Translations under genes and position numbers: made by a program | The notes under the pieces: model-generated | The model's database searches: none | What the model was told of the DNA's origin: nothing | Seen by the model: only the letters and a program-made list of their open reading frames with translations | Virus record (IMG/VR): IMGVR_UViG_3300023174_000038 | Location: 1-64,000 of that record | Length of the DNA: 64,000 nt | Strand: one strand, 5' to 3' | Shown: positions 18,331-35,530 of the stretch, one piece after another | How the letters are laid out: the number at the start of each line of letters is the position of its first letter | How positions within the stretch are numbered: position 1 is the stretch's first letter

Positions 18331-18591
18331 TTATTTTACGTTATCAAATATCTTTTTCTGTTCGTTATACCAATCTTGCCATCCATCTACTTTAGTTGAA
18401 CATTCATAGTAAAGTGAATAGTTATGTACAATAACTTTAAGCATTTCCGTAATAGCTACTTTATCACCTTCAATTTTTTTAAGACTTTCGCATTTCTTCA
18501 TTAATTCAGGGGTAGCATTGGGGAATTTTTGTTTAACAGGAACTACGGTTGAGCATCCGGCTAATAATAGAAGTATTAATAGATATTTCAT
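18331..18591 (-). CDS. Putative o-spanin (Rz1-like lipoprotein)
   Basis: Lipobox LAGC, P..P.LM..C..L pattern, NY..Y..C; overlaps the i-spanin stop. Confidence 0.7.
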   Translation of the reverse strand: MKYLLILLLLAGCSTVVPVKQKFPNATPELMKKCESLKKIEGDKVAITEMLKVIVHNYSLYYECSTKVDGWQDWYNEQKKIFDNVK

Positions 18592-19046
18592 TTTGTAGCC
18601 GCCTTATTCAACTCAGTAGCTTGGTTATGCAAATCTATGATTTCTTTAGGAACGGGACAATTTTCAATATACTTGATAACTTCCTCTTTCTTAACTACTT
18701 CTTTATCAATATACTTGATAACATCACGACCTTTTTCACGGATAACTTTAGTCTTTTCTACAATCTTTTCTTGGATTTCAATGTTCTTATTAGCAGATTG
18801 TACTTCAGCTTGAGCCATTTTAGCTTCCATCTCTTTGACTTTAAGTTCCCACTCTTTATAGTCGGCTAATCCGCCCTCAAGATAAACGCCAAAGACAAGT
18901 ACAATAATGCTACATATTTGTATAGCAAATTGATATGTTTTGACAAAAGGAATGAATCCTAGGACGAATCCTGCTATTGTGCCCAAAATACCTAATCCAA
19001 AGATTATATGTATTGCGGCGTCGGGTAGTAATGATAGTATCCACAT
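18588..19046 (-). CDS. Putative i-spanin (Rz-like)
   Basis: N-terminal TM segments, periplasmic coiled coil, C-terminal C.VP..II.LHN. Confidence 0.65.
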   Translation of the reverse strand: MWILSLLPDAAIHIIFGLGILGTIAGFVLGFIPFVKTYQFAIQICSIIVLVFGVYLEGGLADYKEWELKVKEMEAKMAQAEVQSANKNIEIQEKIVEKTKVIREKGRDVIKYIDKEVVKKEEVIKYIENCPVPKEIIDLHNQATELNKAATK

Positions 19047-24419: not shown

Positions 24420-24525
24420 GCTTTGATAAGGTATCTAATGCTCCGGTGAGTAGTCTAATAAAAATATAAAAGATTACTCCTAGTACTAATACTATAAATC
24501 CATAGCCAAGTATATCTAATATCAT
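24409..24525 (-). CDS. 38-aa single-TM membrane peptide (MILDILGYGFIVLVLGVIFYIFIRLLTGALDTLSKHDD)
   Basis: Hand translation; ATGA overlap with the vWA gene stop; fills the gap between neighbours. Confidence 0.6.
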   Translation of the reverse strand: MILDILGYGFIVLVLGVIFYIFIRLLTGALDTLSKHDD

Positions 24526-25808
24526 GCTGTTACTGGCTCATCATAGATTGCATATGTACCGAATGGGGGATTGGGATTCTTATCACCATGAATGACCCAT
24601 GTCGTATCACAATAATCTGCATCACCCCAACTACCAAAAGGATAGCCATCAGTAAAACAAATCAATCGTTTAGGTACATTGCCGATATCTTTCAAGTACT
24701 TAAAGATACAATCAAAGTCAGTACCGCCACCGCCCATTGGCTCATATTCATCAATGAGGTCCATGTTCTCACTACTGAAGTCTTTGGGGTTGTATGTCTC
24801 AGTATCAAAACAGAATACATGGACCTTATAACCATCAAAACTATTCATCATGCCACCGATTTCACCTAAGAATGCCTGTGCTTGACTATTGCTAATACTA
24901 CCTGACATATCAATTGCAATAACAACATCAATTTCTTCACCGGGATTCATGCCGGGCATGATAGCATCCATGTGCCAACCTCTACGTGAGGGACGCATCC
25001 AACTATAATCTGTACGAATAGCACTTGTCAAATTAGTTTGAATCAGTTCACGCCAAGGCATAACTGGGTTAGTATGCTGTTTAATCAAACGCTCAACACC
25101 TAAGGGTAATGAACCTGCTTCAGCACTACTTGCGGCATTGATAATAGCTTGCTTAACTTCCTGACGTACACGTTCACGTTCTTCAGGACTCATTGAAGGA
25201 CGCTTACCTTTTTTATTACCTTCACCTTCTTGATCACCGTCACTATCACCGTCACCATCCATGTGATCGTCAATCATCTGGTCAACTAAATCATCAATAG
25301 AGATTTTCTGAACATTCTTCATTAAATCATCATAGATTTCTTCTGCGGCTTTACCATCATACTTTTGCTCATATAAGCAAGGTACTGTCTTAATAAACTC
25401 ACCTACTTTGTGACGTTTCAAATCAGCATTAACAGCATAGTCATCAGCAATGTTCCAGATCTCAGGATCACGATTACCTCTACGACCCATGTGGTCATAT
25501 ACAACGTGTAACACTTCATGTCCAACTAAGAATTCAACTTCTTTGGGCTTCAACATCATAATGAAACGACTATTGTAGTAGAATTTCAAGCCATCAGTTG
25601 CCGCTGTACTACACCATTCATCAGCATTAATCAATTGCATACGTGTAGCAAGATTGCCAAAAAAACTATGACGTAACAATAGACCAATACGTGCGGTAAC
25701 TAATTTCTCACGTGCTTGATAGTCAATCTTACTATCTGTAGGTCCTACAAGATTCTCAAATTTCTTACTACGACTACGTTTCTTACTGGGATTAATTACT
25801 TCACTCAT
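24522..25808 (-). CDS. Metallopeptidase-like plus vWA domain protein (DUF2201-type)
   Basis: TAATDG, HEVLH, WN.A.D, MIDAS motif DMSGS, GGGGTDF, FTDG. Confidence 0.85.
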   Translation of the reverse strand: MSEVINPSKKRSRSKKFENLVGPTDSKIDYQAREKLVTARIGLLLRHSFFGNLATRMQLINADEWCSTAATDGLKFYYNSRFIMMLKPKEVEFLVGHEVLHVVYDHMGRRGNRDPEIWNIADDYAVNADLKRHKVGEFIKTVPCLYEQKYDGKAAEEIYDDLMKNVQKISIDDLVDQMIDDHMDGDGDSDGDQEGEGNKKGKRPSMSPEERERVRQEVKQAIINAASSAEAGSLPLGVERLIKQHTNPVMPWRELIQTNLTSAIRTDYSWMRPSRRGWHMDAIMPGMNPGEEIDVVIAIDMSGSISNSQAQAFLGEIGGMMNSFDGYKVHVFCFDTETYNPKDFSSENMDLIDEYEPMGGGGTDFDCIFKYLKDIGNVPKRLICFTDGYPFGSWGDADYCDTTWVIHGDKNPNPPFGTYAIYDEPVTA

Positions 25809-25833
25809 ATTGGTCCTTTGTTATTTAAGTATC

Positions 25834-25866
25834 TATTGTAACAGAGATTGTATTAATTGTCAAAAT
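25834..25866 (-). promoter_or_regulatory. Sigma70-type early promoter
   Basis: TTGACA-ATTAATACAATCTCTGT-TACAAT. Confidence 0.75.
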
Positions 25867-26030
25867 TACATTGACAGTTTGCGATAGCCTTTATCAAAGT
25901 AAATCCTTGCGTAAGGATCCGCACCTTTAGTGTACAGTTCCTCCGCTTCACTTTTGTTCAATCCACGATCTCGGGCACTTTGACCCATTGCGTAGAAATA
26001 CTTCTTGCCAGTTAAAATCTTTGTTGCCAT
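25866..26030 (-). CDS. 54-aa hypothetical protein (MATKILTGKKYFYAMGQSARDRG...)
   Basis: Hand translation; starts just after the ATPase stop and ends at the next promoter. Confidence 0.6.
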   Translation of the reverse strand: MATKILTGKKYFYAMGQSARDRGLNKSEAEELYTKGADPYARIYFDKGYRKLSM

Positions 26031-26031
26031 A

Positions 26032-27132
26032 TTAATTACCTGCGTCTACAATGTACTTGCCGTATTTCTTGTGAAAGTCATCAAAGTTCTTCAACTGACT
26101 AGGTTCAATCGGTAACTTGTATGTCTTAAGCGCAATCTTAGCACCCATAACAACTAGTTCAGTCTCAAAGTTTGCCATAATGTAACTGAAGAAATTATCA
26201 GCCATTGTGTGAAACTCTTTACTAGAAACTTTCTTTGTTTCAAGTGCATCACGCAATTCATAGCACATTGAAATTGTCAATGAGTACATAGCAGAAATTT
26301 CTTTAACTGCAAGGTCCTTAACTTTACCTGACAAAATATCTGAGGGTTCGGGCATACGACCTGCTACTTTACGATGTGCCGCAAACTTAACAGCAAGACC
26401 TTCACCGACAGCACCTGAAATCAAATTGAACAATGTATCACTATCTGTATCATCTTCATCATTCAACAAGTCACTTACAAAACACCATGTACGAGGTGTA
26501 GCAAATGCTCTGCTTGATGATTTAGCATCAAAGTCATACAAATCTTGTTTAGCGAAACTCAAGTAACCCACAACGTCTTTGTGAATACCTTTGTTTACTG
26601 CCCAGTTCTGCCAAGAAGTAAAATCTGCTCTCATTTCTAAGTGTAAGAAACGATTAGCGAGGGGCATCGGCATACGATATGTAACACCTTTGTCACTATC
26701 ACGATTACCTGCCGCAACAATCACAACGTTATCGGGAAGTACATACTTACCAACTCTGCGATTCAAAATCAACTGATAGCCGGCCGCTTGTACTGCGGGA
26801 CTTGCTGAATTCATTTCATCTAAGAATAGAACAACGATAGGGTACTTGCTTGCTAGTTCATCATCAGGCAAGTCAACTGGTGCCGCCCAATCCATCTTAT
26901 TAATATCTTTATTAAAGAATGGGATACCACGAATGTCAGTAGGCTCCATTTGTGCCATACGCAAGTCAATCATGTAGCCACCGAGTTCTTCAGTAACTTC
27001 TGCTACAACTTCTGATTTACCGATGCCGGGAGGGCCCCACAAGAAAAGCGGGCGTTTTGCTTTAAATGCTTTAAGCATTGCTTTGCGAGTTTGTACACTA
27101 GTGATAGTGAGATTATCTGATACTGATGCCAT
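26032..27132 (-). CDS. MoxR-like AAA+ ATPase
   Basis: WGPPGIGKS, LFLDEMN, AAGNR, PLANRF, TPRTW; partner vWA gene downstream. Confidence 0.88.
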   Translation of the reverse strand: MASVSDNLTITSVQTRKAMLKAFKAKRPLFLWGPPGIGKSEVVAEVTEELGGYMIDLRMAQMEPTDIRGIPFFNKDINKMDWAAPVDLPDDELASKYPIVVLFLDEMNSASPAVQAAGYQLILNRRVGKYVLPDNVVIVAAGNRDSDKGVTYRMPMPLANRFLHLEMRADFTSWQNWAVNKGIHKDVVGYLSFAKQDLYDFDAKSSSRAFATPRTWCFVSDLLNDEDDTDSDTLFNLISGAVGEGLAVKFAAHRKVAGRMPEPSDILSGKVKDLAVKEISAMYSLTISMCYELRDALETKKVSSKEFHTMADNFFSYIMANFETELVVMGAKIALKTYKLPIEPSQLKNFDDFHKKYGKYIVDAGN

Positions 27133-27165: not shown

Positions 27166-27298
27166 AGTATAGTATAAAACTGATTTATTGTCAAATTTTG
27201 TGTTGTTGTTTATTTACAACAGTTTGGGTGTTGATAAACTGTCAGTTTTCTAGCTTCAATATGAGTATTGTATCACTGATTGGATTTATTGTCAAATT
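27166..27298 (-). promoter_or_regulatory. Two tandem sigma70 early promoters of the TTGACAATAAAT family
   Basis: TTGACA-N17-TACAAT (about 27267-27295) and TTGACA-N17-TATACT (about 27166-27194). Confidence 0.8.
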
Positions 27299-27594
27299 TA
27301 AGCAATACACTTGTATGCTCTACTTAGCATAGCTTGTAAGAGAGTACTGGCCCTACTAACATCAAAGTTTTCTTGACGATAGTGCCATTTTTTCTTACGT
27401 TCTGCAATTTCTAGTAGGTCCATTAGTTTATACTTGTCTTTTAGATCATTTGTACCCATAAGCATTTTCTGCATATCTACAATATCTAAACTGTACTCTA
27501 CCCATTTCATTGTACTATCAATCTTTTTCTTAGGGATCATTAGTGGCCCATCAATTGATTTTGTATACTTCAATACATAATTTGCTATCTTCAT
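27298..27594 (-). CDS. Hypothetical early protein
   Basis: 98 aa with its own promoter and SD AAGGA. Confidence 0.7.
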   Translation of the reverse strand: MKIANYVLKYTKSIDGPLMIPKKKIDSTMKWVEYSLDIVDMQKMLMGTNDLKDKYKLMDLLEIAERKKKWHYRQENFDVSRASTLLQAMLSRAYKCIA

Positions 27595-27621
27595 AATAGG
27601 TCCTTAATTAAGTAAAAGTCA

Positions 27622-27652
27622 ATTATAGACCCAAAACGATTTATTGTCAAAT
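27622..27652 (-). promoter_or_regulatory. Consensus sigma70 promoter
   Basis: TTGACA-ATAAATCGTTTTGGGTC-TATAAT. Confidence 0.85.
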
Positions 27653-27906
27653 TACTTCATTAAATTAGCCATTAATACTAACTTTTCTAAGTGATTGATA
27701 GCATTATTGATATCGGCTACTTTGTCATCAAGCATTGAGAACTTACCCGTTCTACGAATAGCTACCTCAAGCTTGCTTAATTCTGTAACCATTTTGTCTA
27801 TGTTTTTGTGCATACGATGTAAGTCTGGATTATAGCCAATGCCATTCATTTGACTACTTAAGTAACTACTAACTTGATTCCAATCTAATGCACGTTCTAT
27901 TTTCAT
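27652..27906 (-). CDS. Hypothetical early protein (probably leaderless mRNA)
   Basis: 84 aa; TTGACA-N17-TATAAT ends 6 nt before the ATG. Confidence 0.7.
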   Translation of the reverse strand: MKIERALDWNQVSSYLSSQMNGIGYNPDLHRMHKNIDKMVTELSKLEVAIRRTGKFSMLDDKVADINNAINHLEKLVLMANLMK

Positions 27907-27942
27907 AAGAGTATTATAACATGTTATGGTATTTATGTCAAC

Positions 27943-27985: not shown

Positions 27986-28891
27986 TTAAAAGCTATGAGA
28001 TAAACCAATACCAACTTGTTTAACATCATTTGTTTTACCACCAGCATCAACATTGCGATAAGCAACTAATACATTGGTACGCTTACTGAAAGCATAATTA
28101 ACACCTACGTTATATGCTTTAACTTCTCCTGCGGCTAAACCAGTTTTAGTAGCATAGCTACCTTTAACACTAACTTCATTAGTTACCGGAGCTGTTACAC
28201 CATAAAAATGACCTTTAGTTTTAACTAGACCTGCTTTATCATCACTTTGAATTGTAGACAATTCAAAACCAGCTAGTTTTCCACTAGCAGTTACTACATT
28301 GGTATAATCTGTACCAGATTCAAAACGTGCAACTGCGGCTGCAACAGGACCTAATTTTCCACCAATACTCCATGATGTTGCTTCTAACGTAGCAGGTGCT
28401 GTGTACATACTACGGTCATACGTAGCAAATACAGGACCAAAATTTGCGGCTAAGTAAGCACCATCACCAATACGCTTGTCACGTACATTAACTACATCAA
28501 CCGAAACGGATGAATAAAGCGCACCGCCAAATGGATCAGCGTTCTTCATAGTAATGTATTCACTGTGTTCTTTACGACCTAAATCAATACTACCAAATTT
28601 ATTAGAAAGACCAATTGTACTTTGACGATCACCTAATTGTGTTGTAGCCCCAGCTTTTGGATCATCGGCTACTACAGAAGTTTCAACAACTACTCTAGCT
28701 GTTAATCCATGTCCTAATTTTTCTTCAGCTTTGATGCCAAAACGACTTGAATCATTAACAAGAGAGTTAATTTTTACAGTACCTGTTTTAGTGCTATCAG
28801 CAAATTCACTGATTTTACCATATACTGATACTTGTGCTGTTGCAACCATTGTTGTTGCAGCCAATAATGTCGCTAATGCGATTTTTTTCAT
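27986..28891 (-). CDS. Gram-negative general porin (beta-proteobacterial type)
   Basis: Signal peptide, AQVSVYG, SRFGIKAEEKLGHGL, RQSTIGL..FGSIDLGR, YAFSKRT, C-terminal GIGLSHSF. Confidence 0.9.
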   Translation of the reverse strand: MKKIALATLLAATTMVATAQVSVYGKISEFADSTKTGTVKINSLVNDSSRFGIKAEEKLGHGLTARVVVETSVVADDPKAGATTQLGDRQSTIGLSNKFGSIDLGRKEHSEYITMKNADPFGGALYSSVSVDVVNVRDKRIGDGAYLAANFGPVFATYDRSMYTAPATLEATSWSIGGKLGPVAAAVARFESGTDYTNVVTASGKLAGFELSTIQSDDKAGLVKTKGHFYGVTAPVTNEVSVKGSYATKTGLAAGEVKAYNVGVNYAFSKRTNVLVAYRNVDAGGKTNDVKQVGIGLSHSF

Positions 28892-28975
28892 AAAATTTCC
28901 TTTTAAAAATAAACCTGATTAATCAGGCTAGACTAATATTTATAGTAATTTTTTCTACCCATATAAAATAGTTGT

Positions 28976-29668
28976 TTACGTAATAACGTCTGCTTTAACA
29001 TGAAAAATAGCTCTTTTTACCAAACTATCTATACTATTAACTAAGGGAATGCCGTTTTTTTCTACTTCTCTAACGGCTAATGGTAATTCTGTACAACCTA
29101 ATACTACTGCACTTGCTCCACGACTAATCAAACTGTCTACTACAGGCATTAACATATTATGTGATACAACCATATCCCCTGCCTTAATTAAATCTATAGC
29201 AGGTTGTACTATGTTGTTCATTTCTTCTTGACTGGGGACAATACAATCCCAATCAATTAAACGATTTTGATATAAGCCTAATTCAATTGTAGCTTGTGTT
29301 CCCATTATACCTATTGTACCCGTAACATTTATATCACGTAATACATCAGCTACACTATCTACAATATGTAAAATAGGAACTTTAAATTTAACTAATTCAT
29401 CATACCAGTAATGCGCTGTATTACAAGGGATAACAATCGTAGTACATCCAACTGCTTTCAATACTTGCATACCTTGTAGTAAATATGGTAGTGGTCTATC
29501 ATCACCATTACGTATACTTGTGCTACGATCAGGTACACGTGGCTCATTCCATAATACAAATGGAATATGTTCTTGGTCACAAGTTGCGGGGGTTTGTTGT
29601 ATAAGTCGTGTTATATATTCCGCACTTGCTGCCGGACCCATACCGCCTAGTATACCTAGACGTTTCAT
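28976..29668 (-). CDS. Aspartate/glutamate racemase family protein
   Basis: LGILGGMGP, catalytic cysteine pair IPCNTAH and LGCTELP. Confidence 0.92.
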   Translation of the reverse strand: MKRLGILGGMGPAASAEYITRLIQQTPATCDQEHIPFVLWNEPRVPDRSTSIRNGDDRPLPYLLQGMQVLKAVGCTTIVIPCNTAHYWYDELVKFKVPILHIVDSVADVLRDINVTGTIGIMGTQATIELGLYQNRLIDWDCIVPSQEEMNNIVQPAIDLIKAGDMVVSHNMLMPVVDSLISRGASAVVLGCTELPLAVREVEKNGIPLVNSIDSLVKRAIFHVKADVIT

Positions 29669-30270
29669 TTTTTGTTAAACAATAAACTAGATGCAATAAC
29701 CATAGCAGTTTGTGCGGCTTCTACATCTGTGGGTTGTTCTTTCCAACCTACACTAATCTGCCCAATGAAGACTCCGGGCTCTGCTGGTACACTGATACGA
29801 CACATATAGTTTACTCCGTATTCTTTATATACAAATCCAATAAGACTTTGTGGCTTTGTATATGGGCTACAGGGAATCTTACCTGACATCAATCCAATAA
29901 CATCGTTATTATTGTCATAGTTTTTACTAAACAACCCAACTTCTAATCCGTCATTTCTTTTATCTCTACCACCATTGCGTGTAGCTAAGTAAACAACTTT
30001 TCGTGTGTTAAGCAATGTATTGACTTCAAGAAAGGCAACCATTTCTACTTCAGTATTTTTTAATAAGAAATTATATGCGTCATCATACTTACCGTTCATC
30101 TTTGGTAATGCCTGTTGAGCACGGTAACTTGCTAAGAAGGCATCTTTTTCTGTATAAACTATCCAACCACCAAATCCTAGTACACAGAGAAACACAACGG
30201 TGAATAGGCGAAATGGACTTTCGCCTATATAGGTTAATAAACTAAAGAGAAAATCTTTAAGTTTGTCCAC
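29665..30270 (-). CDS. Single-TM membrane protein with a C-terminal GAF-like domain; resembles the T4 holin T architecture
   Basis: N-terminal amphipathic segment, TM at about aa 20-39, two Cys, C-terminal strand-strand-helix pattern; CDS is solid, function is inference. Confidence 0.55.
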   Translation of the reverse strand: MDKLKDFLFSLLTYIGESPFRLFTVVFLCVLGFGGWIVYTEKDAFLASYRAQQALPKMNGKYDDAYNFLLKNTEVEMVAFLEVNTLLNTRKVVYLATRNGGRDKRNDGLEVGLFSKNYDNNNDVIGLMSGKIPCSPYTKPQSLIGFVYKEYGVNYMCRISVPAEPGVFIGQISVGWKEQPTDVEAAQTAMVIASSLLFNKK

Positions 30271-31534
30271 CAGTAGCTACCTCTTTGTCGCAGACAAATG
30301 CTGTTACTGCAACATTGCCGTGTACGTGACTTGCTGTACGAATCATATCCATTAATGGATCAACGGCAATTAACAATACTAACACAGCTTCACTTGGTAG
30401 TTTTAATAAGTCACACACAACTGCTACTGTAGCAACTGTAAGAATACCTGTTGTACCTGCACTTGCTAATCCTGCCAAAATACTACCAAATAACACAACT
30501 GCTAGTCCCGTTAAGCCTAATGGAGCATCATAGATATTAGCAATGAATACTGTAGCAATAGCATAGTAAACAATACTACCAATACGATTGACTGTAAAAC
30601 TTAGTGGAACTGTTAGTTCAACACCACCTTTATCAAAGTGTAGTCTGTGTAATGATTCTTGTGCGTATGGAATACAAGCTAAACTACTACGTGAACTAAT
30701 AGCAACAATCAATGTTTCTTTAGTTTCACGGATAACAGTCATTAGACTTAATCCACTACGATACCAGATCATAGCAGTACCTGCGGCTACAACTAATAGT
30801 CCACCAACAAACTGTTGGAATACAAAGTCAAACATTGTTAAGAATATACCTACCCCTACCTTACCAACTTGGGCAGCAATCATTGCTAATAGAGCGATTG
30901 GTAAAAAGTAATTTAAGAATTTAAAGATACTGATACTTGCTTGTTGAATGCTTTTAAGTACTTCAACTAGCATCTTTTGACCTTCTGTTTTAAGATGTCC
31001 AAGAGCAACACCAAATATTAAACAGAAGATAACAATCTTCAAACTTTCACCATTGTTTAACGTGTTGAAAATGTTTTCTGGAATAAACTTCTCTGCCATC
31101 TTACCTGCACTTACTGCCGGTGCTACTGGCATTGGTTCTTTAAGAGTAATGTTTAAATCAGTACCACTGTCTTTGTTATTAACCAATACACCAAGTTGTG
31201 TTTTCTTTTCAGGAGTCATTTCAGTTCCTGTGACTAAAACTGTACCTACGCCAATTATTGCGGCTAAGAACATGCTACCAACAAAGCCTACAATGATTTT
31301 GCGTATTAATTGTTGGCTGCCTTCTTTTTGTAGTAAGCCAATGATACCAACTAGTATAGTTGCTAACAAGAATGGTAGTACAACAACTTTAAGTAAACTT
31401 ATATAGATACTACCAATACTATCAAAGTTAATGCTGAACTCGGGTGCGTAAACACCACTCAATATACCCACGATAATAGAACCAAGTATGGTCCACGGGC
31501 TTGTTAAAAACGTTTTTAAATGTGCGGTTGTCAT
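30257..31534 (-). CDS. Dicarboxylate/amino acid:cation symporter (DAACS, GltP-like)
   Basis: Multi-TM; LLK.VVLP, FIPENIF, SSRSS motif, DMIRTA in TM8. Confidence 0.9.
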   Translation of the reverse strand: MTTAHLKTFLTSPWTILGSIIVGILSGVYAPEFSINFDSIGSIYISLLKVVVLPFLLATILVGIIGLLQKEGSQQLIRKIIVGFVGSMFLAAIIGVGTVLVTGTEMTPEKKTQLGVLVNNKDSGTDLNITLKEPMPVAPAVSAGKMAEKFIPENIFNTLNNGESLKIVIFCLIFGVALGHLKTEGQKMLVEVLKSIQQASISIFKFLNYFLPIALLAMIAAQVGKVGVGIFLTMFDFVFQQFVGGLLVVAAGTAMIWYRSGLSLMTVIRETKETLIVAISSRSSLACIPYAQESLHRLHFDKGGVELTVPLSFTVNRIGSIVYYAIATVFIANIYDAPLGLTGLAVVLFGSILAGLASAGTTGILTVATVAVVCDLLKLPSEAVLVLLIAVDPLMDMIRTASHVHGNVAVTAFVCDKEVATGGQT

Positions 31535-31543
31535 ACTGAGTCC

Positions 31544-32361
31544 TTATTTCTTTTCAGCTTTGTAGCGATCCATTAACTTTTTAGTGTCAATATTACTGTA
31601 TTCATTTTTAATAACGTAATTAATAATGCTTAACAGTTGTAGTGATTTAGGATTTACTGCTACAGCAATATTATCTACGCTATCACTTATTGTAATTGTC
31701 TTAGTACTAATTGCGGCGTCTGGTTTCTCAAAAGCAATTTTCTTAATTTCAAACTCATCACGGTACGCAGCCGCAATATCACCCCTTGTAACTTTATCAA
31801 TGATTACATCCCATTTATCTTCTGGTAGAAATACAGCATTAGGGAAATTGATACGGGCAAATGTGTCATAGCTTGAGTTACGAATAAAACTTATTTTACC
31901 GTTAAAATCTCTAATTACTTGATATGTTTCTTTGCCTTGACTATTTTGACTTAGCCATAAACGATTAACAACTAAACTTTGTCTTAGCTTAATATAAGGA
32001 TCACTGAACCTAACAACCTGTAATCTAGGGCCGGTTACTGACAATTTGCTAACAGCAATATCGGCACGTCCGTCTCGTACTTGTTCAACAACTTCAGCAA
32101 AACTTTCTGCATCTCGTCTAAATTGTACTGGAACTCCGAGTAATACTCCAATTCTTCGTGCAATTTCAACGTCAAGACCATGGATATCATCCTCACCGCC
32201 ACTGAAGAAGGGAGGGTTATCTTTTTTGGTCATAGCCACAATAAGAACGTTTGCTTTCTTAATTGCGGCTATATCAGGGGGTAGTGGTACCGTAGAAGTT
32301 GGTAATTGTGCGTGGACAACTGAACTAATCAGTACAAATAATAATAGTAGTAGTTTTTTCA
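31544..32361 (-). CDS. Periplasmic amino-acid binding protein (family 3 SBP)
   Basis: Signal peptide MKKLLLL, NPPFF, GLDVEIA, GRADIAVS.LSVT..R, RFSDPY; start near 32361 (track start 32380). Confidence 0.85.
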
Positions 32362-32404
32362 TAGTGTTGTATTTATGCAAGGTTATATGTCAATTGTTTT
32401 ACTA

Positions 32405-32430
32405 ATAAAAAAGAGCCCCACAGAGCCCTT
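32405..32430 (-). terminator. Intrinsic terminator
   Basis: GC-rich hairpin AAGGGCTCTGTGGGGCTCTT followed by a T tract. Confidence 0.65.
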
Positions 32431-32512
32431 AGTACTGGTTACGCAAATCCAGCGACACGCTATTTTGTGTCCGATTTAAATATAGCTAAAAACCAGCGTT
32501 TAACGCCAGTAA

Positions 32513-33242: not shown

Positions 33243-33953
33243 TCACGACCAATATTTAGATCCGTCTAAATTGTCCCAATATTTTTTATTGTTCCGATTA
33301 ACAAAATTCTTAACCAAATATTTACCCATACCAAGATATCCCATCTTTTTAAATCTACGACTATCCTGTCCAAAGTGATGCTTAATGATTCTAAATTTTT
33401 TTGGACTGTACTTTTTAGACAAGAAATAATCCTCAGATGTTACAAACTGTTCAGGGAATCCTCCATATTCAATAAACTTATCTCTACGGGTTAGCATAAA
33501 TGCCCCAACAGCAAATGGACTAAAGAATTTCAATGTATGATTTATTGTATTAAAAAGCGTAAATCCAATCATAGCTCTTGGGTCTTTATCATAAGATTTG
33601 ATGTTTAACCCAACAAGATCCAATTGTTTAGATTCCATAATATCTACTGCATCTTTTATTACATTATTCTTAAAGAAACGAACATCAGCATCAATGAATA
33701 AAATGTACGGCGTTGTGGCTAATTTAGCACCGTTATTTTTAGCAATAGAAACAGGGCCGCCACCAATAATTTCAACATTCAATGAATAACTATTATCTTT
33801 AATGACCTTTCTAGTATTATCAGTGGAACAGTCAGCAATGATAACTCTAGTATCACCAATATCTTGACTACGCAACGAATCTAACAAATGATGAATATAA
33901 TTTTCTTCATTCTTGCAAGGTACAACAATAGTAATTTTATCACTGAGTTTCAT
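33243..33953 (-). CDS. Family 2 glycosyltransferase
   Basis: TIVVPCKNEE, IIADCSTDNT, KNNGA, LFIDAD, GGF, SED; start MKLSDK at 33953. Confidence 0.9.
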   Translation of the reverse strand: MKLSDKITIVVPCKNEENYIHHLLDSLRSQDIGDTRVIIADCSTDNTRKVIKDNSYSLNVEIIGGGPVSIAKNNGAKLATTPYILFIDADVRFFKNNVIKDAVDIMESKQLDLVGLNIKSYDKDPRAMIGFTLFNTINHTLKFFSPFAVGAFMLTRRDKFIEYGGFPEQFVTSEDYFLSKKYSPKKFRIIKHHFGQDSRRFKKMGYLGMGKYLVKNFVNRNNKKYWDNLDGSKYWS

Positions 33954-34120
33954 TTTTTTATACACTTTCCTTCAATTTTAAATTGATTAAACTTTAACCA
34001 ATATGTCATACTTTGTAAACTTTGTTCACATGAGGATCGGTCCTGAAATGTCAGTTCTACCCGTCCCGGTATGTCCTTTGGGTCGTTCATATGAACTGCT
34101 AATATTAGTAATACCCACAT
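33950..34120 (-). CDS. 56-aa protein with hydrophobic N-terminus (MWVLLILAVHMNDPKDIPGRVELTFQDRSSCEQ...GKCIKK)
   Basis: Hand translation; SD GGAGAAGGA; ATGA overlap with the GT2 start; overlaps the tail of the upstream phosphoesterase gene. Confidence 0.55.
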   Translation of the reverse strand: MWVLLILAVHMNDPKDIPGRVELTFQDRSSCEQSLQSMTYWLKFNQFKIEGKCIKK

Positions 34121-34868
34121 TGTCCTTCTCCTTAGTCCAAGTAACTATTTCCCAACGTCCATCATGATGTTCTACTAATGCTGTACAACTTTCAACCCAG
34201 TCGCCATCATTCATATAGATAACACCATCTATAGTTTTTATTTCAGCATGGTGTATATGACCACATATCACACCATCAAAGCCACGCTTTTTACAATAGC
34301 CAGCAAGATTCTTTTCAAACTGAAACATAAAATCTATAGCTTTTTTTACTTTGTGTTTAAGGTATTTGCTAATACTAAAGTACCCAAAACCAAAACGATG
34401 ACGTATCCAATTGAACTTACTATTGAGCGATAAAATGAAATCATATGCTTTGTCTCCTAAAAATGCTAACCAAGGTGCTAGTCGTGTTATGCCATCAAAC
34501 AAATCACCATGTGTAACTAAATAATGCTTACCATCTATACCTATATGTTCTATTTGATTATGAATTTCTATAAGACCAAAACTAAAATCATATGGAATCA
34601 TAGGTCTTAAAAACTCATCGTGATTGCCAGCAATATAAACAACTCTAGTACCACGTTTAGCATGGCCTAACACTCTACGTACTACATTGGTATGGCTTTG
34701 TTTCCAGCGCCATTTGTTTTGCTGTATACGCCATGCATCAATAATATCACCTACTAGATAAAGTGTATCACATGTATTGTGCTTTAAAAAGTTATTTAAC
34801 CTATCAGCCTGACTATCTTTGGTACCTAAATGTACATCACTCACAAAAATAGAACGATATGTTTTCAT
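34026..34868 (-). CDS. Metallophosphoesterase of the PlcP/LpxH-like family
   Basis: SDVHLG, LVGDIID.W, GNHDE, HGDLFD, CGHIHH, YMNDGDWVESCTAL; start MKTYRS at 34868. Confidence 0.85.
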   Translation of the reverse strand: MKTYRSIFVSDVHLGTKDSQADRLNNFLKHNTCDTLYLVGDIIDAWRIQQNKWRWKQSHTNVVRRVLGHAKRGTRVVYIAGNHDEFLRPMIPYDFSFGLIEIHNQIEHIGIDGKHYLVTHGDLFDGITRLAPWLAFLGDKAYDFILSLNSKFNWIRHRFGFGYFSISKYLKHKVKKAIDFMFQFEKNLAGYCKKRGFDGVICGHIHHAEIKTIDGVIYMNDGDWVESCTALVEHHDGRWEIVTWTKEKDNVGITNISSSYERPKGHTGTGRTDISGPILM

Positions 34869-34872
34869 ATAG

Positions 34873-34907
34873 TATTTATTGAGAGATATGTGACAAATTA
34901 GTGACAA
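34873..34907 (-). promoter_or_regulatory. Pho-box-like direct repeat plus TAAATA
   Basis: TTGTCAC-TAAT-TTGTCAC, 11 nt, TAAATA, 4 nt, ATG. Confidence 0.72.
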
Positions 34908-34909
34908 TC

Positions 34910-35530
34910 TTATTTGTTAGCTAAAGGATTGTCCATAGCTTTTTGTATTTTGCTATCAACTTCTCTCTTTAGCGTCTCTACTTCACGGTTGATTTCTCTA
35001 CGTGCCGCAGTAAATTCACTGTTAATTTCTTTACGGGTTGATTCCATATCTTTGCGAATTTGATTAGCTTCGTTCCTTGCTCTCTCCAAGTCTTCTCGCA
35101 CAGCTTTACGCATATCACGCATTTCTGATTCTGTTTCACGTTGTGCATTCTTAACACTACGTTCTACTTGTTCAGTTACAGTTTCATTACGGCGAATATC
35201 GTTCTTTAAATCGGTTTTGATATCACGTGTGTAATCAGCACCCTTTTGACTATTTTCTTCAATAACTGCTAAACGCTTATCAAATCCAGATAAGTCTGGC
35301 GCAGAGTATTCAGCTATCTTTTTCTTCATACCCACATAGTCTTTATAGACTTCAAATGTTCCATAAAGTCCACCTAATATAGATGATACGATAGTAAACG
35401 CTACCATTAGTTTAGCTGGAGTAAACTCATACCCACCAATACTAATTACAGTATCTTTACTTGCGTATTTCTTAGCGGCGGCTTCAAGTTCATCAACTTT
35501 AGCATTTACGTTTTTAATTTCTTCACTCAT
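34910..35530 (-). CDS. Membrane-anchored coiled-coil protein
   Basis: One TM (LMVAFTIVSSILGGLYG), long R/E/K heptad region, ends DNPLANK. Confidence 0.75.
   Translation of the reverse strand: MSEEIKNVNAKVDELEAAAKKYASKDTVISIGGYEFTPAKLMVAFTIVSSILGGLYGTFEVYKDYVGMKKKIAEYSAPDLSGFDKRLAVIEENSQKGADYTRDIKTDLKNDIRRNETVTEQVERSVKNAQRETESEMRDMRKAVREDLERARNEANQIRKDMESTRKEINSEFTAARREINREVETLKREVDSKIQKAMDNPLANK

What the first reader, a model, noticed from the sequence alone, without database searches (positions are those of the whole stretch)
29665..30270. Holin-T-like protein embedded in the amino-acid operon: possible nutrient-responsive lysis timing
The 201-aa protein has the layout of T4 holin T: amphipathic N-terminus, one TM, and a periplasmic domain of about 160 aa with two Cys and a GAF-like C-terminal pattern (YMCRISVP...FIGQISVGW...helix). 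In T4, lysis inhibition acts through a periplasmic partner binding this domain. Coupling to an amino-acid binding protein and a racemase suggests lysis could be tuned by external (D-)amino acids. The fold similarity is judged by eye and the regulatory model is speculation.
Basis: inference. Interest (0 to 1): 0.7.

Follow-up and report, generated by a model that had tools for sequence, protein, structure and literature searches.

The report
T4-holin-like gene in transporter operon
A freshwater giant phage carries a distant relative of the phage T4 lysis-timing protein (holin T) that is wired, in most related phages too, into one operon with a nutrient-uptake transporter, an unexpected pairing whose purpose is untested.

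Summary
The ORF is real: 201 aa, window 29665-30270 (-), under strong purifying selection. It has an amphipathic N-terminus, one TM helix and a 160-aa C-terminal domain with two near-invariant Cys.

The holin-T guess is supported.
- The AF2 model (pLDDT 96) has a GAF-like fold. The solved T4 holin T periplasmic domain is its best PDB match (Z 12.8), only slightly ahead of ordinary GAF domains.
- A profile of 57 family members aligns with a profile of 27 PF11031 holins over the whole length (95%, E 3e-8). Pfam itself does not detect the protein.
- Relatives at 40-50% identity sit in lysis cassettes beside GH19 or GH108 endolysins and Rz-like spanins.

In 66 of 80 IMG/VR relatives the gene directly follows an SBP-SDF symporter pair. 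A racemase follows in 51, and a conserved TATAAATA-type promoter precedes the unit.

This is most likely a class III (T-type) holin. The 348.7-kb genome also encodes a GTA-type holin candidate, a soluble GH19 endolysin and a spanin pair.

Nutrient-tuned lysis remains speculation. The SBP complex prediction gave no answer, and the racemase scores as a cysteate racemase rather than an Asp/Glu one.

The parts
29665..30270 (-). T-holin-like gene, 201 aa. Residues 2-16 form an amphipathic cytoplasmic helix, residues 20-40 the TM helix (nt 30151-30213), and residues 58-200 a periplasmic GAF-like domain (nt 29671-30099) with conserved C134 and C157.
30257..31534 (-). Sodium:dicarboxylate (DAACS/SDF) family symporter, 425 aa. 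Its stop overlaps the T-like start.
   Evidence: Pfam SDF E 4e-66. Directly upstream of the T-like gene in 66 of 80 related loci.
31544..32362 (-). Periplasmic solute-binding protein (SBP_bac_3) with a signal peptide. The true start is the ATG at 32362, not the TTG at 32380.
28976..29668 (-). Asp/Glu-family racemase with both catalytic Cys motifs (IPCNTAH, GCTE). It scores above the cut-off for cysteate racemase CuyB.
   Evidence: Downstream of the T-like gene in 51 of 80 loci.
32370..32377 (-). CATAAATA, a T4-late-promoter-like motif 7 nt upstream of the SBP ATG. It is conserved in relatives although the flanking sequence is not.
32411..32510 (-). Two terminator-like hairpins (32510-32492 and 32430-32411) that close the preceding gene just upstream of the operon.
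28912..28929 (-). Terminator-like hairpin after the racemase gene, closing the four-gene unit.
18588..19046 (-). i-spanin candidate: TM region, then coiled coil, then a C-terminal CPVP motif. It has the same ATAAATA-type motif 8 nt upstream.
18331..18591 (-). o-spanin candidate, a lipoprotein with lipobox LLAGC. Weak match to the Rz1-like LysC family.
27986..28891 (-). Porin_4 outer-membrane porin gene next to the operon. It is present near the block in only some relatives.

Best explanation
The gene encodes a distant member of the T4 gpt type of holin (class III, or 'IIIa'). The proposed mechanism has four steps.
1. The short amphipathic N-terminus stays in the cytoplasm, one TM helix spans the inner membrane, and a disulfide-stabilised GAF-like domain sits in the periplasm.
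2. The protein is made from a late-type (TATAAATA-like) promoter. It is translationally coupled to an SBP-SDF uptake pair and a racemase.
3. It accumulates in the inner membrane. At a set time it oligomerises through its TM helix into large holes.
4. The holes release the phage's soluble GH19 endolysin. The Rz/Rz1-like spanin pair (18331-19046) then completes lysis.

As in T4, the periplasmic domain is the likely site at which hole formation is delayed or released by a partner or ligand.

Shown here: fold, remote homology, architecture, operon structure, lysis-cassette context in relatives, and the lysis gene inventory of this genome.

Inferred: topology, the disulfide, holin activity, late timing, and any regulation.
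For: Structure:
- AF2 model with pLDDT 96.3.
- VIA-align ranks 1-3 are T4 holin T chains 6px4_B, 6psk_T and 6pxe_B: Z 12.8-12.5, rmsd 3.2 A, 131-134 of about 141-145 residues.
- Foldseek ranks the same entries 3-7.
- BFVD matches include proteins named holin, class III holin and T holin.

Sequence:
- hhalign of the family profile A1 against the PF11031 profile A2 gives 95.1%, E 3e-8, over 190 collinear columns from the N-terminus through the TM to the C-terminus.
- W176 and G170 align with the invariant W192 and G186 of T.
- A neighbouring ESM Atlas cluster carries PF11031.

Context in relatives:
- L021 has GH19 endolysin, T-like and Rz-like spanin in that order, with 4-nt overlaps. L022 has GH19, spanin, T-like.
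- L012 has a GH108 endolysin directly upstream. L007 has a GH108 directly downstream.
- MW202825 has a lysozyme two genes away.
- Straboviridae phages S13 and Ci1 carry this family and have no PF11031 gene, while T4 as the control scores E 1e-119.

Topology:
- R or K precedes the TM in 122 of 138 members, and the Cys pair is conserved in 137 of 138.
- Paralogues in L056 and L058 have a Lys-rich N-terminal tail.

This genome:
- It has a single T-like gene.
- It has a soluble GH19 endolysin that would need a holin.
- It has a spanin pair carrying the same promoter motif.
Against: - There is no Pfam, NCBIfam or PADLOC-type family hit. The PF11031-based profile alone does not detect the protein.
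- The structural margin over ordinary GAF domains is small (Z 12.8 against 12.2).
- The disulfide of T (C175-C207) is not at the same positions.
- In this genome the gene is not next to an endolysin. The GH19 gene lies at genome 311204-311824.
- A GTA_holin_3TM-family protein just over the Pfam cut-off lies at genome 300129-300755 and could be the real holin.
- In L056 and L058 the SDF-linked copy coexists with a second T-like gene placed nearer the endolysin. The SDF-linked clade may therefore have a specialised role.
- No experiment of any kind exists.
Confidence: 0.6

Rival explanations
1. The protein is a lysis regulator (antiholin or timing sensor), not the hole-former. The GTA_holin_3TM-like protein makes the holes. 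The T-like protein uses its periplasmic GAF-like domain to sense a periplasmic signal, possibly the liganded SBP or the transported solute, and delays or advances triggering.
For: - A second holin candidate exists in the genome.
- Two T-like paralogues occur in L056 and L058, one inside the SDF block and one near the GH19 gene.
- The SBP-SDF-T-like linkage is conserved in 66 of 80 loci while the flanks vary.
- In T4 the same domain is the docking site of antiholin RI (PDB 6psk and 6px4 titles).
Against: - The SBP complex prediction scored 0.00, which the tool rates as no evidence either way.
- In L021 and L022 the T-like gene is the only membrane candidate besides the spanin.
- No ligand or partner has been identified.
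- The GTA-holin match is marginal (25.4 bits against a cut-off of 24.8) and covers only the C-terminal third of the protein.
Confidence: 0.17
2. In the SDF-linked clade the T-like protein has been recruited as an accessory subunit of the uptake system. It would be a bitopic adaptor that couples the periplasmic SBP to the SDF symporter, by analogy with the small subunits of TRAP and TTT transporters. It would have no role in lysis.
For: - The gene order SBP, SDF, T-like is tight and conserved, with overlapping or closely abutting reading frames, and the unit ends at T-like in the basal lineages.
- SBP_bac_3 proteins normally need a membrane partner, and SDF carriers are not known to use one (established knowledge of the families).
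Against: - A Burkholderiales MAG contig carries the same SBP-SDF pair at 66% identity without any T-like gene, so the pair can exist without it.
- Members nested inside the SDF-linked clade occur away from any transporter (L032, L038, L059, L077, L080, L084).
- The window protein is 43-46% identical to lysis-cassette members.
- It is the only T-like gene in a genome that needs a holin for its soluble endolysin.
Confidence: 0.13
3. The protein is a generic membrane-anchored GAF sensor unrelated to T holins, and the similarity is only the common GAF fold.
For: - Many GAF domains score Z 11-12, close to T's 12.8.
- The top AFDB Swiss-Prot hits are all cellular GAF proteins. Per the tool's own description, the AlphaFold DB libraries hold no viral proteins.
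Against: - The profile-profile match to PF11031 spans the N-terminal segment and the TM as well as the domain.
- There is no Pfam GAF hit.
- Architecture, size and phage lysis-cassette context match T, not cellular GAF proteins.
Confidence: 0.05

Closest known systems
Phage T4 holin T (gpt; Pfam PF11031 Phage_holin_T; PDB 6PSK, 6PX4, 6PXE), founder of the class III holins
   Same: - About 200-220 aa with a short cytoplasmic N-terminus, one TM and a large periplasmic alpha/beta (GAF-like) domain.
- Whole-length profile-profile homology and best structural match.
- Found beside endolysin and spanin genes or at the end of tail-fibre modules in relatives.
   Different: - Not detected by the Pfam model.
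- 11-12% identity in the structural alignments.
- The N-terminal segment is shorter by about 15 residues.
- The conserved Cys pair (134/157) differs from T's 175/207.
- No rI or rIII homologues are found.
- It occurs in a 349-kb freshwater phage and in small integrase-bearing phages, and is embedded in a transporter operon.
phiKZ gp142 ('class IIIb' holin, PMC12894885)
   Same: A jumbo-phage holin with a single N-in, C-out TM.
   Different: gp142 has its large soluble domain in the cytoplasm and a small periplasmic one (PMC12894885). Here the large domain is C-terminal, which is the T4-like 'IIIa' layout.
GAF domains of cellular sensor proteins (for example PDE10A 2ZMF, histidine-kinase GAF 3O5Y)
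   Same: Same fold at Z 11-12 and rmsd 3.2-3.6 A.
   Different: There is no sequence-family match. The domain is membrane-anchored, periplasmic and carries a Cys pair. No output domain is attached.

Membership tests
Phage_holin_T (PF11031), class III holin | Match to the curated family HMM at or above its cut-off | tested here: not met
   No Pfam hit at E <= 0.1. No PF11031 match in the whole genome at E <= 1. A local profile built from A2 gives E = 1.
Phage_holin_T (PF11031), class III holin | Homology to T holins detectable at profile-profile level over the full length | tested here: met
   hhalign of A1 against A2: 95.1%, E 3e-8, 190 columns.
Phage_holin_T (PF11031), class III holin | One TM, N-in and C-out, with the large soluble domain on the periplasmic side | tested here: inconclusive
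   A single TM at residues 20-40 is predicted. A basic residue before the TM is conserved and a Cys pair in the C-terminal domain is conserved. Topology itself has not been measured.
Phage_holin_T (PF11031), class III holin | Periplasmic domain with the fold of solved T | tested here: met
   6px4_B Z 12.8, rmsd 3.2 A, 131 of 141 residues, rank 1 of 999 chains. The margin over GAF domains is small.
Phage_holin_T (PF11031), class III holin | The T disulfide pair C175-C207 (both invariant in the A2 alignment) | tested here: not met
   C157 aligns two residues from the C175 of T, and no Cys aligns with C207. The family instead has its own pair, C134/C157.
Phage_holin_T (PF11031), class III holin | Genetic association with endolysin and spanin genes | tested here: met
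   Met in relatives L007, L012, L021, L022, L028 and MW202825. In this genome the lysis genes are scattered, as they are in T4.
Phage_holin_T (PF11031), class III holin | Partner antiholins RI (periplasmic) and RIII (cytoplasmic) | tested here: not met
   phmmer --max with T4 rI, rI.1 and rIII finds nothing below E 0.2 in the genome or in the 80 loci. These proteins diverge quickly, so absence is weak evidence.
Phage_holin_T (PF11031), class III holin | Timed lethal hole formation that releases soluble endolysin | not testable with these tools
   Needs a complementation or induction experiment.
GAF domain (Pfam clan GAF) | GAF fold | tested here: met
GAF domain (Pfam clan GAF) | Match to a GAF family HMM, and small-molecule binding | tested here: not met
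   No GAF-family Pfam hit. Ligand binding is not testable here.
SBP-dependent secondary transporters (TRAP, TTT) | DctQ/TctB-type multi-span small subunit with a DctM/TctA carrier | tested here: not met
   The carrier is of the SDF family, and the small protein has a single TM with a T-like domain.

The most novel reading that the evidence does not exclude
The unit SBP, SDF symporter, T-like holin (with or without the racemase) is a dedicated phage module in which lysis timing is gated by nutrient status. Two mechanisms are conceivable. The liganded periplasmic SBP could act on the holin's GAF-like domain as an RI-like antiholin. Alternatively, substrate-driven cation symport could drain the membrane potential that holds the holin in check. 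This would be the first environmental-solute input into a holin clock.
Probability: 0.15. Interest if true: 0.85.

Novelty: new variant of a known kind. Interest (0 to 1): 0.6.

Why it matters
[quoted passage not shown] This family extends the type in several ways.
- It reaches abundant freshwater jumbo phages: more than 600 clusters at 90% identity, on contigs up to 525 kb.
- It reaches small integrase-bearing phages.
- It occurs in two Straboviridae that lack a canonical t gene.
- It gives an annotation to phrog_31287.

The conserved operon with a probably host-derived SBP-SDF uptake pair is not something known lysis systems show. If the coupling is functional, it offers a testable route by which a phage could read nutrient conditions when deciding when to lyse.

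Tried and rejected
- Pfam, NCBIfam and PDB sequence searches gave no informative hit for the protein.
- phmmer matches to long Flg_new-repeat proteins (P0170, P0189, P0198, P0212) were judged spurious.
- The complex prediction with the SBP gave no answer.
- The RNA run search found only one run holding 4% of the words, probably DNA.
- I guessed that the 168-aa membrane protein of MW202825 was a GTA-type holin. Pfam did not confirm this and the guess is withdrawn.
- GH108, T4-lysozyme, SLT and Amidase_2 endolysins are absent from the genome.
- The M15_4 domain lies inside a 930-aa ORF, so it is probably a virion lysin rather than the endolysin.
- The search for related loci failed with the 57-sequence alignment because it was too diverse. 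It worked with four sequences.
- The genome-contig scan is pattern-limited and returned only two MAG contigs. It cannot show how common the SBP-SDF pair is in bacteria.
- SG-SG distances of C134 and C157 could not be read because model coordinates are not exposed.
- The sigma-70 scan showed no excess of promoters in the region.

Full report
SETTING

The window is the first 64 kb of a 348,701-bp IMG/VR phage record that CheckV rates complete. GC content is about 35% and nearly all genes lie on the minus strand. Runs holding the sequence come from lake and other freshwater metagenomes.

OBSERVATION

The ORF at 29665-30270 (-) encodes 201 aa. Its GTG start follows AGAGG and overlaps the end of an SDF-family symporter gene by 14 nt. 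Its stop overlaps the start of a racemase gene by 4 nt.

- It has one hydrophobic segment (residues about 20-40).
- The N-terminal helix is amphipathic (moment 0.43).
- Cys residues are at 29, 134 and 157.
- More than 600 clusters at 90% identity match it in metagenomes, on contigs up to 326 kb.
- An exhaustive search finds 97 representative clusters at 50% identity, nearly all about 200 aa.
- dN/dS against relatives is 0.02-0.09.

WHAT THE PROTEIN IS

No Pfam or NCBIfam family matches. PHROGs places it in phrog_31287, of unknown function.

Structure:
- With a 57-sequence alignment, AlphaFold2 gives a model at pLDDT 96.3. It has helix 2-16, TM helix 19-40, helix 42-54, and then an alpha/beta domain at residues 58-200.
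- Foldseek against the PDB returns GAF domains together with the periplasmic domain of T4 holin T, from the RI-T complexes 6PX4, 6PSK and 6PXE, at ranks 3-7.
- Realigned with VIA-align, the three T entries are ranks 1-3: Z 12.8-12.5, rmsd 3.2 A, 131-134 residues aligned. Model residues 58-200 correspond to T residues 78-217. Ordinary GAF domains follow at Z 12.2 and below.
- The margin is small, so the fold alone does not separate 'T' from 'GAF'.

Evidence that does separate them:
- A profile-profile comparison of the family (A1) with 27 PF11031 holins (A2) gives 95.1% probability and E 3e-8. It covers 190 collinear columns that include the N-terminal segment, the TM, the linker helix and the domain. 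Against the single T4 sequence the value is only 15%.
- W176 and G170 align with the invariant W192 and G186 of T.
- The ESM Atlas lists a neighbouring cluster in which 12% of members carry PF11031.
- BFVD matches include proteins annotated as holin, class III holin and T holin.

The family is therefore a remote homologue of T that Pfam's model does not reach. T's own Cys pair (175/207, invariant in A2) is not conserved. The family has another pair, 134/157, kept in 137 of 138 members.

CONTEXT IN RELATIVES

Lysis-cassette contexts:
- L007 (P0172): T-like directly upstream of a GH108 endolysin.
- L012 (P0123, 43% identical): tail fibres, then GH108 endolysin, then T-like, then an 88-aa one-TM protein, then an integrase.
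- P0122 (46% identical): preceded by a LysC-like o-spanin.
- P0142: four genes upstream of a GH108.
- MW202825: two genes upstream of a lysozyme.
- IMG/VR locus L021: GH19 endolysin, T-like and a 112-aa Rz-like spanin, with 4-nt overlaps. L022: GH19, spanin, T-like.
- P0133: lies after tail-fibre genes next to divergent early genes. T4's t gene sits in the same kind of position.

The Straboviridae phages S13 and Ci1 have a member of this family. They have no PF11031 gene at E <= 1, while T4 scores 1e-119 in the same search.

These contexts are what one expects of a holin.

THE OPERON

In this phage the gene order is SBP_bac_3 (signal peptide, true ATG at 32362), SDF symporter, T-like, racemase.

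- The racemase has both catalytic Cys motifs. It scores 211.7 bits against NCBIfam's cysteate racemase CuyB, whose cut-off is 190. It falls far below the cut-offs of the Glu and Asp/Glu racemase equivalogs.
- Terminator-like hairpins lie just before the SBP gene and just after the racemase gene.
- Close relatives keep the four genes together while the flanks differ.
- A 60%-identical relative keeps SBP-SDF-T-like.

Of 80 IMG/VR loci found with a four-sequence alignment, local phmmer classification gives the following:
- 66 have an SDF gene directly upstream of the T-like gene.
- 58 also have the SBP.
- 51 have a racemase downstream.
- 13 have a homologue of this phage's GH19 endolysin within 5 kb, in at least six different arrangements.

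Further points on the unit's history:
- Basal lineages have a three-gene unit that ends with T-like.
- On a tree of 89 T-like proteins, four of the five endolysin-adjacent forms fall in one clade (SH-aLRT 100). The fifth, L007, sits apart on a very long branch. The SDF-linked forms fill most of the rest. A few members nested among them lie elsewhere, for example L032, L038 and L059 beside a secreted 98-aa protein.
- L056 and L058 carry two T-like genes. One is in the SDF block. The other has a Lys-rich N-terminal tail and sits beside a secreted 92-aa protein near the GH19 gene.
- A Burkholderiales MAG contig with bacterial-looking neighbours has the SBP-SDF pair at 66% identity and no T-like gene. 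The pair is therefore probably host-derived, and the T-like gene is the phage-specific addition.

PROMOTER

Seven nucleotides upstream of the SBP ATG lies CATAAATA. The same [TC]ATAAATA motif is found at the same place in relatives whose upstream sequence is otherwise unrelated.

- In the whole genome the motif occurs 54 times, against about 117 expected from base composition.
- Half of the occurrences lie within 60 nt upstream of a gene start on the correct strand. Those positions make up about 3% of the genome.
- Genes preceded by the motif include the i-spanin gene and several very large genes.

TATAAATA is the T4 late-promoter consensus (established knowledge). That it marks late genes in this phage is an inference.

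OTHER LYSIS GENES IN THE GENOME

- A soluble 206-aa GH19-type endolysin at 311204-311824 (phrog_181, E 4e-73), lying between tail-fibre-like giants.
- A Hydrolase_2 protein with an N-terminal TM at 176911-177549.
- An M15_4 domain inside a 930-aa ORF.
- An i-spanin and lipoprotein o-spanin pair in the window at 18331-19046.
- A 208-aa protein at 300129-300755 whose C-terminal third passes the Pfam cut-off for GTA_holin_3TM by 0.6 bits.
- Only one T-like gene.
- No rI or rIII homologues.

MECHANISM AND RIVALS

The best-supported reading is a T-type holin that releases the soluble GH19 endolysin, with the spanins finishing lysis (confidence 0.6).

The main rival is that it regulates lysis while the GTA-type protein forms the holes (0.17). 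It draws on the conserved linkage to the SBP and on the role of the same domain in T4 as the RI docking site. The single complex prediction, T-like residues 42-201 with mature SBP, scored 0.00, and the tool states that this is no evidence either way.

A third reading, recruitment as an accessory subunit of the uptake system (0.13), is weakened by two observations. The bacterial SBP-SDF pair lacks it. Members of the SDF-linked clade also occur without a transporter.

A generic GAF sensor (0.05) is disfavoured by the full-length homology to T.

NOVELTY

[quoted passage not shown] This family widens that range, and its habitual operon with uptake genes has no described counterpart. I rate it a new variant of a known kind, with interest 0.6. 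The function itself is inferred, not shown.

Noticed in passing
window 18331-19046 (-): A spanin pair. The 152-aa i-spanin candidate has a TM region, a coiled coil and a C-terminal CPVP motif. The 86-aa lipoprotein has lipobox LLAGC and a weak LysC/Rz1-like hit. The two genes overlap by 4 nt, and an ATAAATA-type motif lies 8 nt upstream.
   Followed up: partly
whole genome; window 32370-32377 and 28935-28945 (-): [TC]ATAAATA, the T4 late-promoter consensus, is under-represented overall (54 occurrences against about 117 expected). Half of the copies lie within 60 nt upstream of gene starts, often only 3-8 nt from the ATG. That spacing would imply leaderless or near-leaderless mRNAs.
   Followed up: partly
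window 27166-27941 (-): Four near-perfect sigma-70 consensus promoters (12/12, 12/12, 11/12, 11/12) lie in front of small ORFs just downstream of the porin gene. They look like a cluster of host-RNAP early promoters.
   Followed up: no
window 27986-28891 (-): The phage encodes a Porin_4 outer-membrane porin with a signal peptide and weak similarity to Neisseria PorB. With the SBP, the SDF carrier and the racemase, it would give a complete route from the outer membrane to the cytoplasm.
   Followed up: partly
window 28976-29668 (-): The racemase passes NCBIfam's equivalog cut-off for cysteate racemase CuyB (211.7 bits against 190). This hints that the operon handles a sulfonate or acidic amino acid other than Asp or Glu.
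   Followed up: no
genome 300129-300755 (-) (L114): A 208-aa protein with a Gly/Ser-rich N-terminal half and a C-terminal membrane part. It just passes Pfam GTA_holin_3TM (25.4 bits against 24.8). It is a second holin candidate, 11 kb from the GH19 endolysin.
   Followed up: partly
genome 311204-311824 (-) (L014:1378-1998) and 176911-177549 (+) (L101): Two muralytic candidates. One is a soluble GH19-type endolysin wedged between 1761-aa and 825-aa tail-fibre-like genes. The other is a Hydrolase_2 (SleB-like) protein with a Leu-rich N-terminal TM or signal sequence, lying after baseplate-like genes.
   Followed up: partly
L032:4129-4425, L059:4142-4438, L056:4849-5127; genome 226587-226904 (+): Small secreted proteins of 92-98 aa, with a signal peptide and Cys residues, sit directly after T-like genes that lie outside the transporter block. 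This is reminiscent of T4's periplasmic antiholin RI. A phrog_25396 homologue exists in this genome, far from the T-like gene.
   Followed up: partly
L116 (CAIQHG010000029.1, uncultured Burkholderiales MAG): A bacterial-looking contig carries an SBP-SDF pair 66% identical to the phage's, without a T-like gene. Nearby are a CoxS-like gene and a second SDF paralogue. This is a clue to the host lineage and to the origin of the uptake genes.
   Followed up: partly
L047 and L081 (IMGVR_UViG_3300027749_002876, 524,565 bp): One 525-kb viral contig holds two diverged copies of the SBP-SDF-T-like-racemase block, about 193 kb apart. It is either a very large phage with a duplicated module or a chimeric assembly.
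   Followed up: no
window 24522-27132 (-), 33243-34907 (-), 34910-35530 (-): Other unusual cargo near the operon: a MoxR-type AAA ATPase with a VWA-domain protein, a GT2 glycosyltransferase, an LpxH-like metallophosphatase, and a 206-aa bitopic coiled-coil protein preceded by the ATAAATA motif.
   Followed up: no
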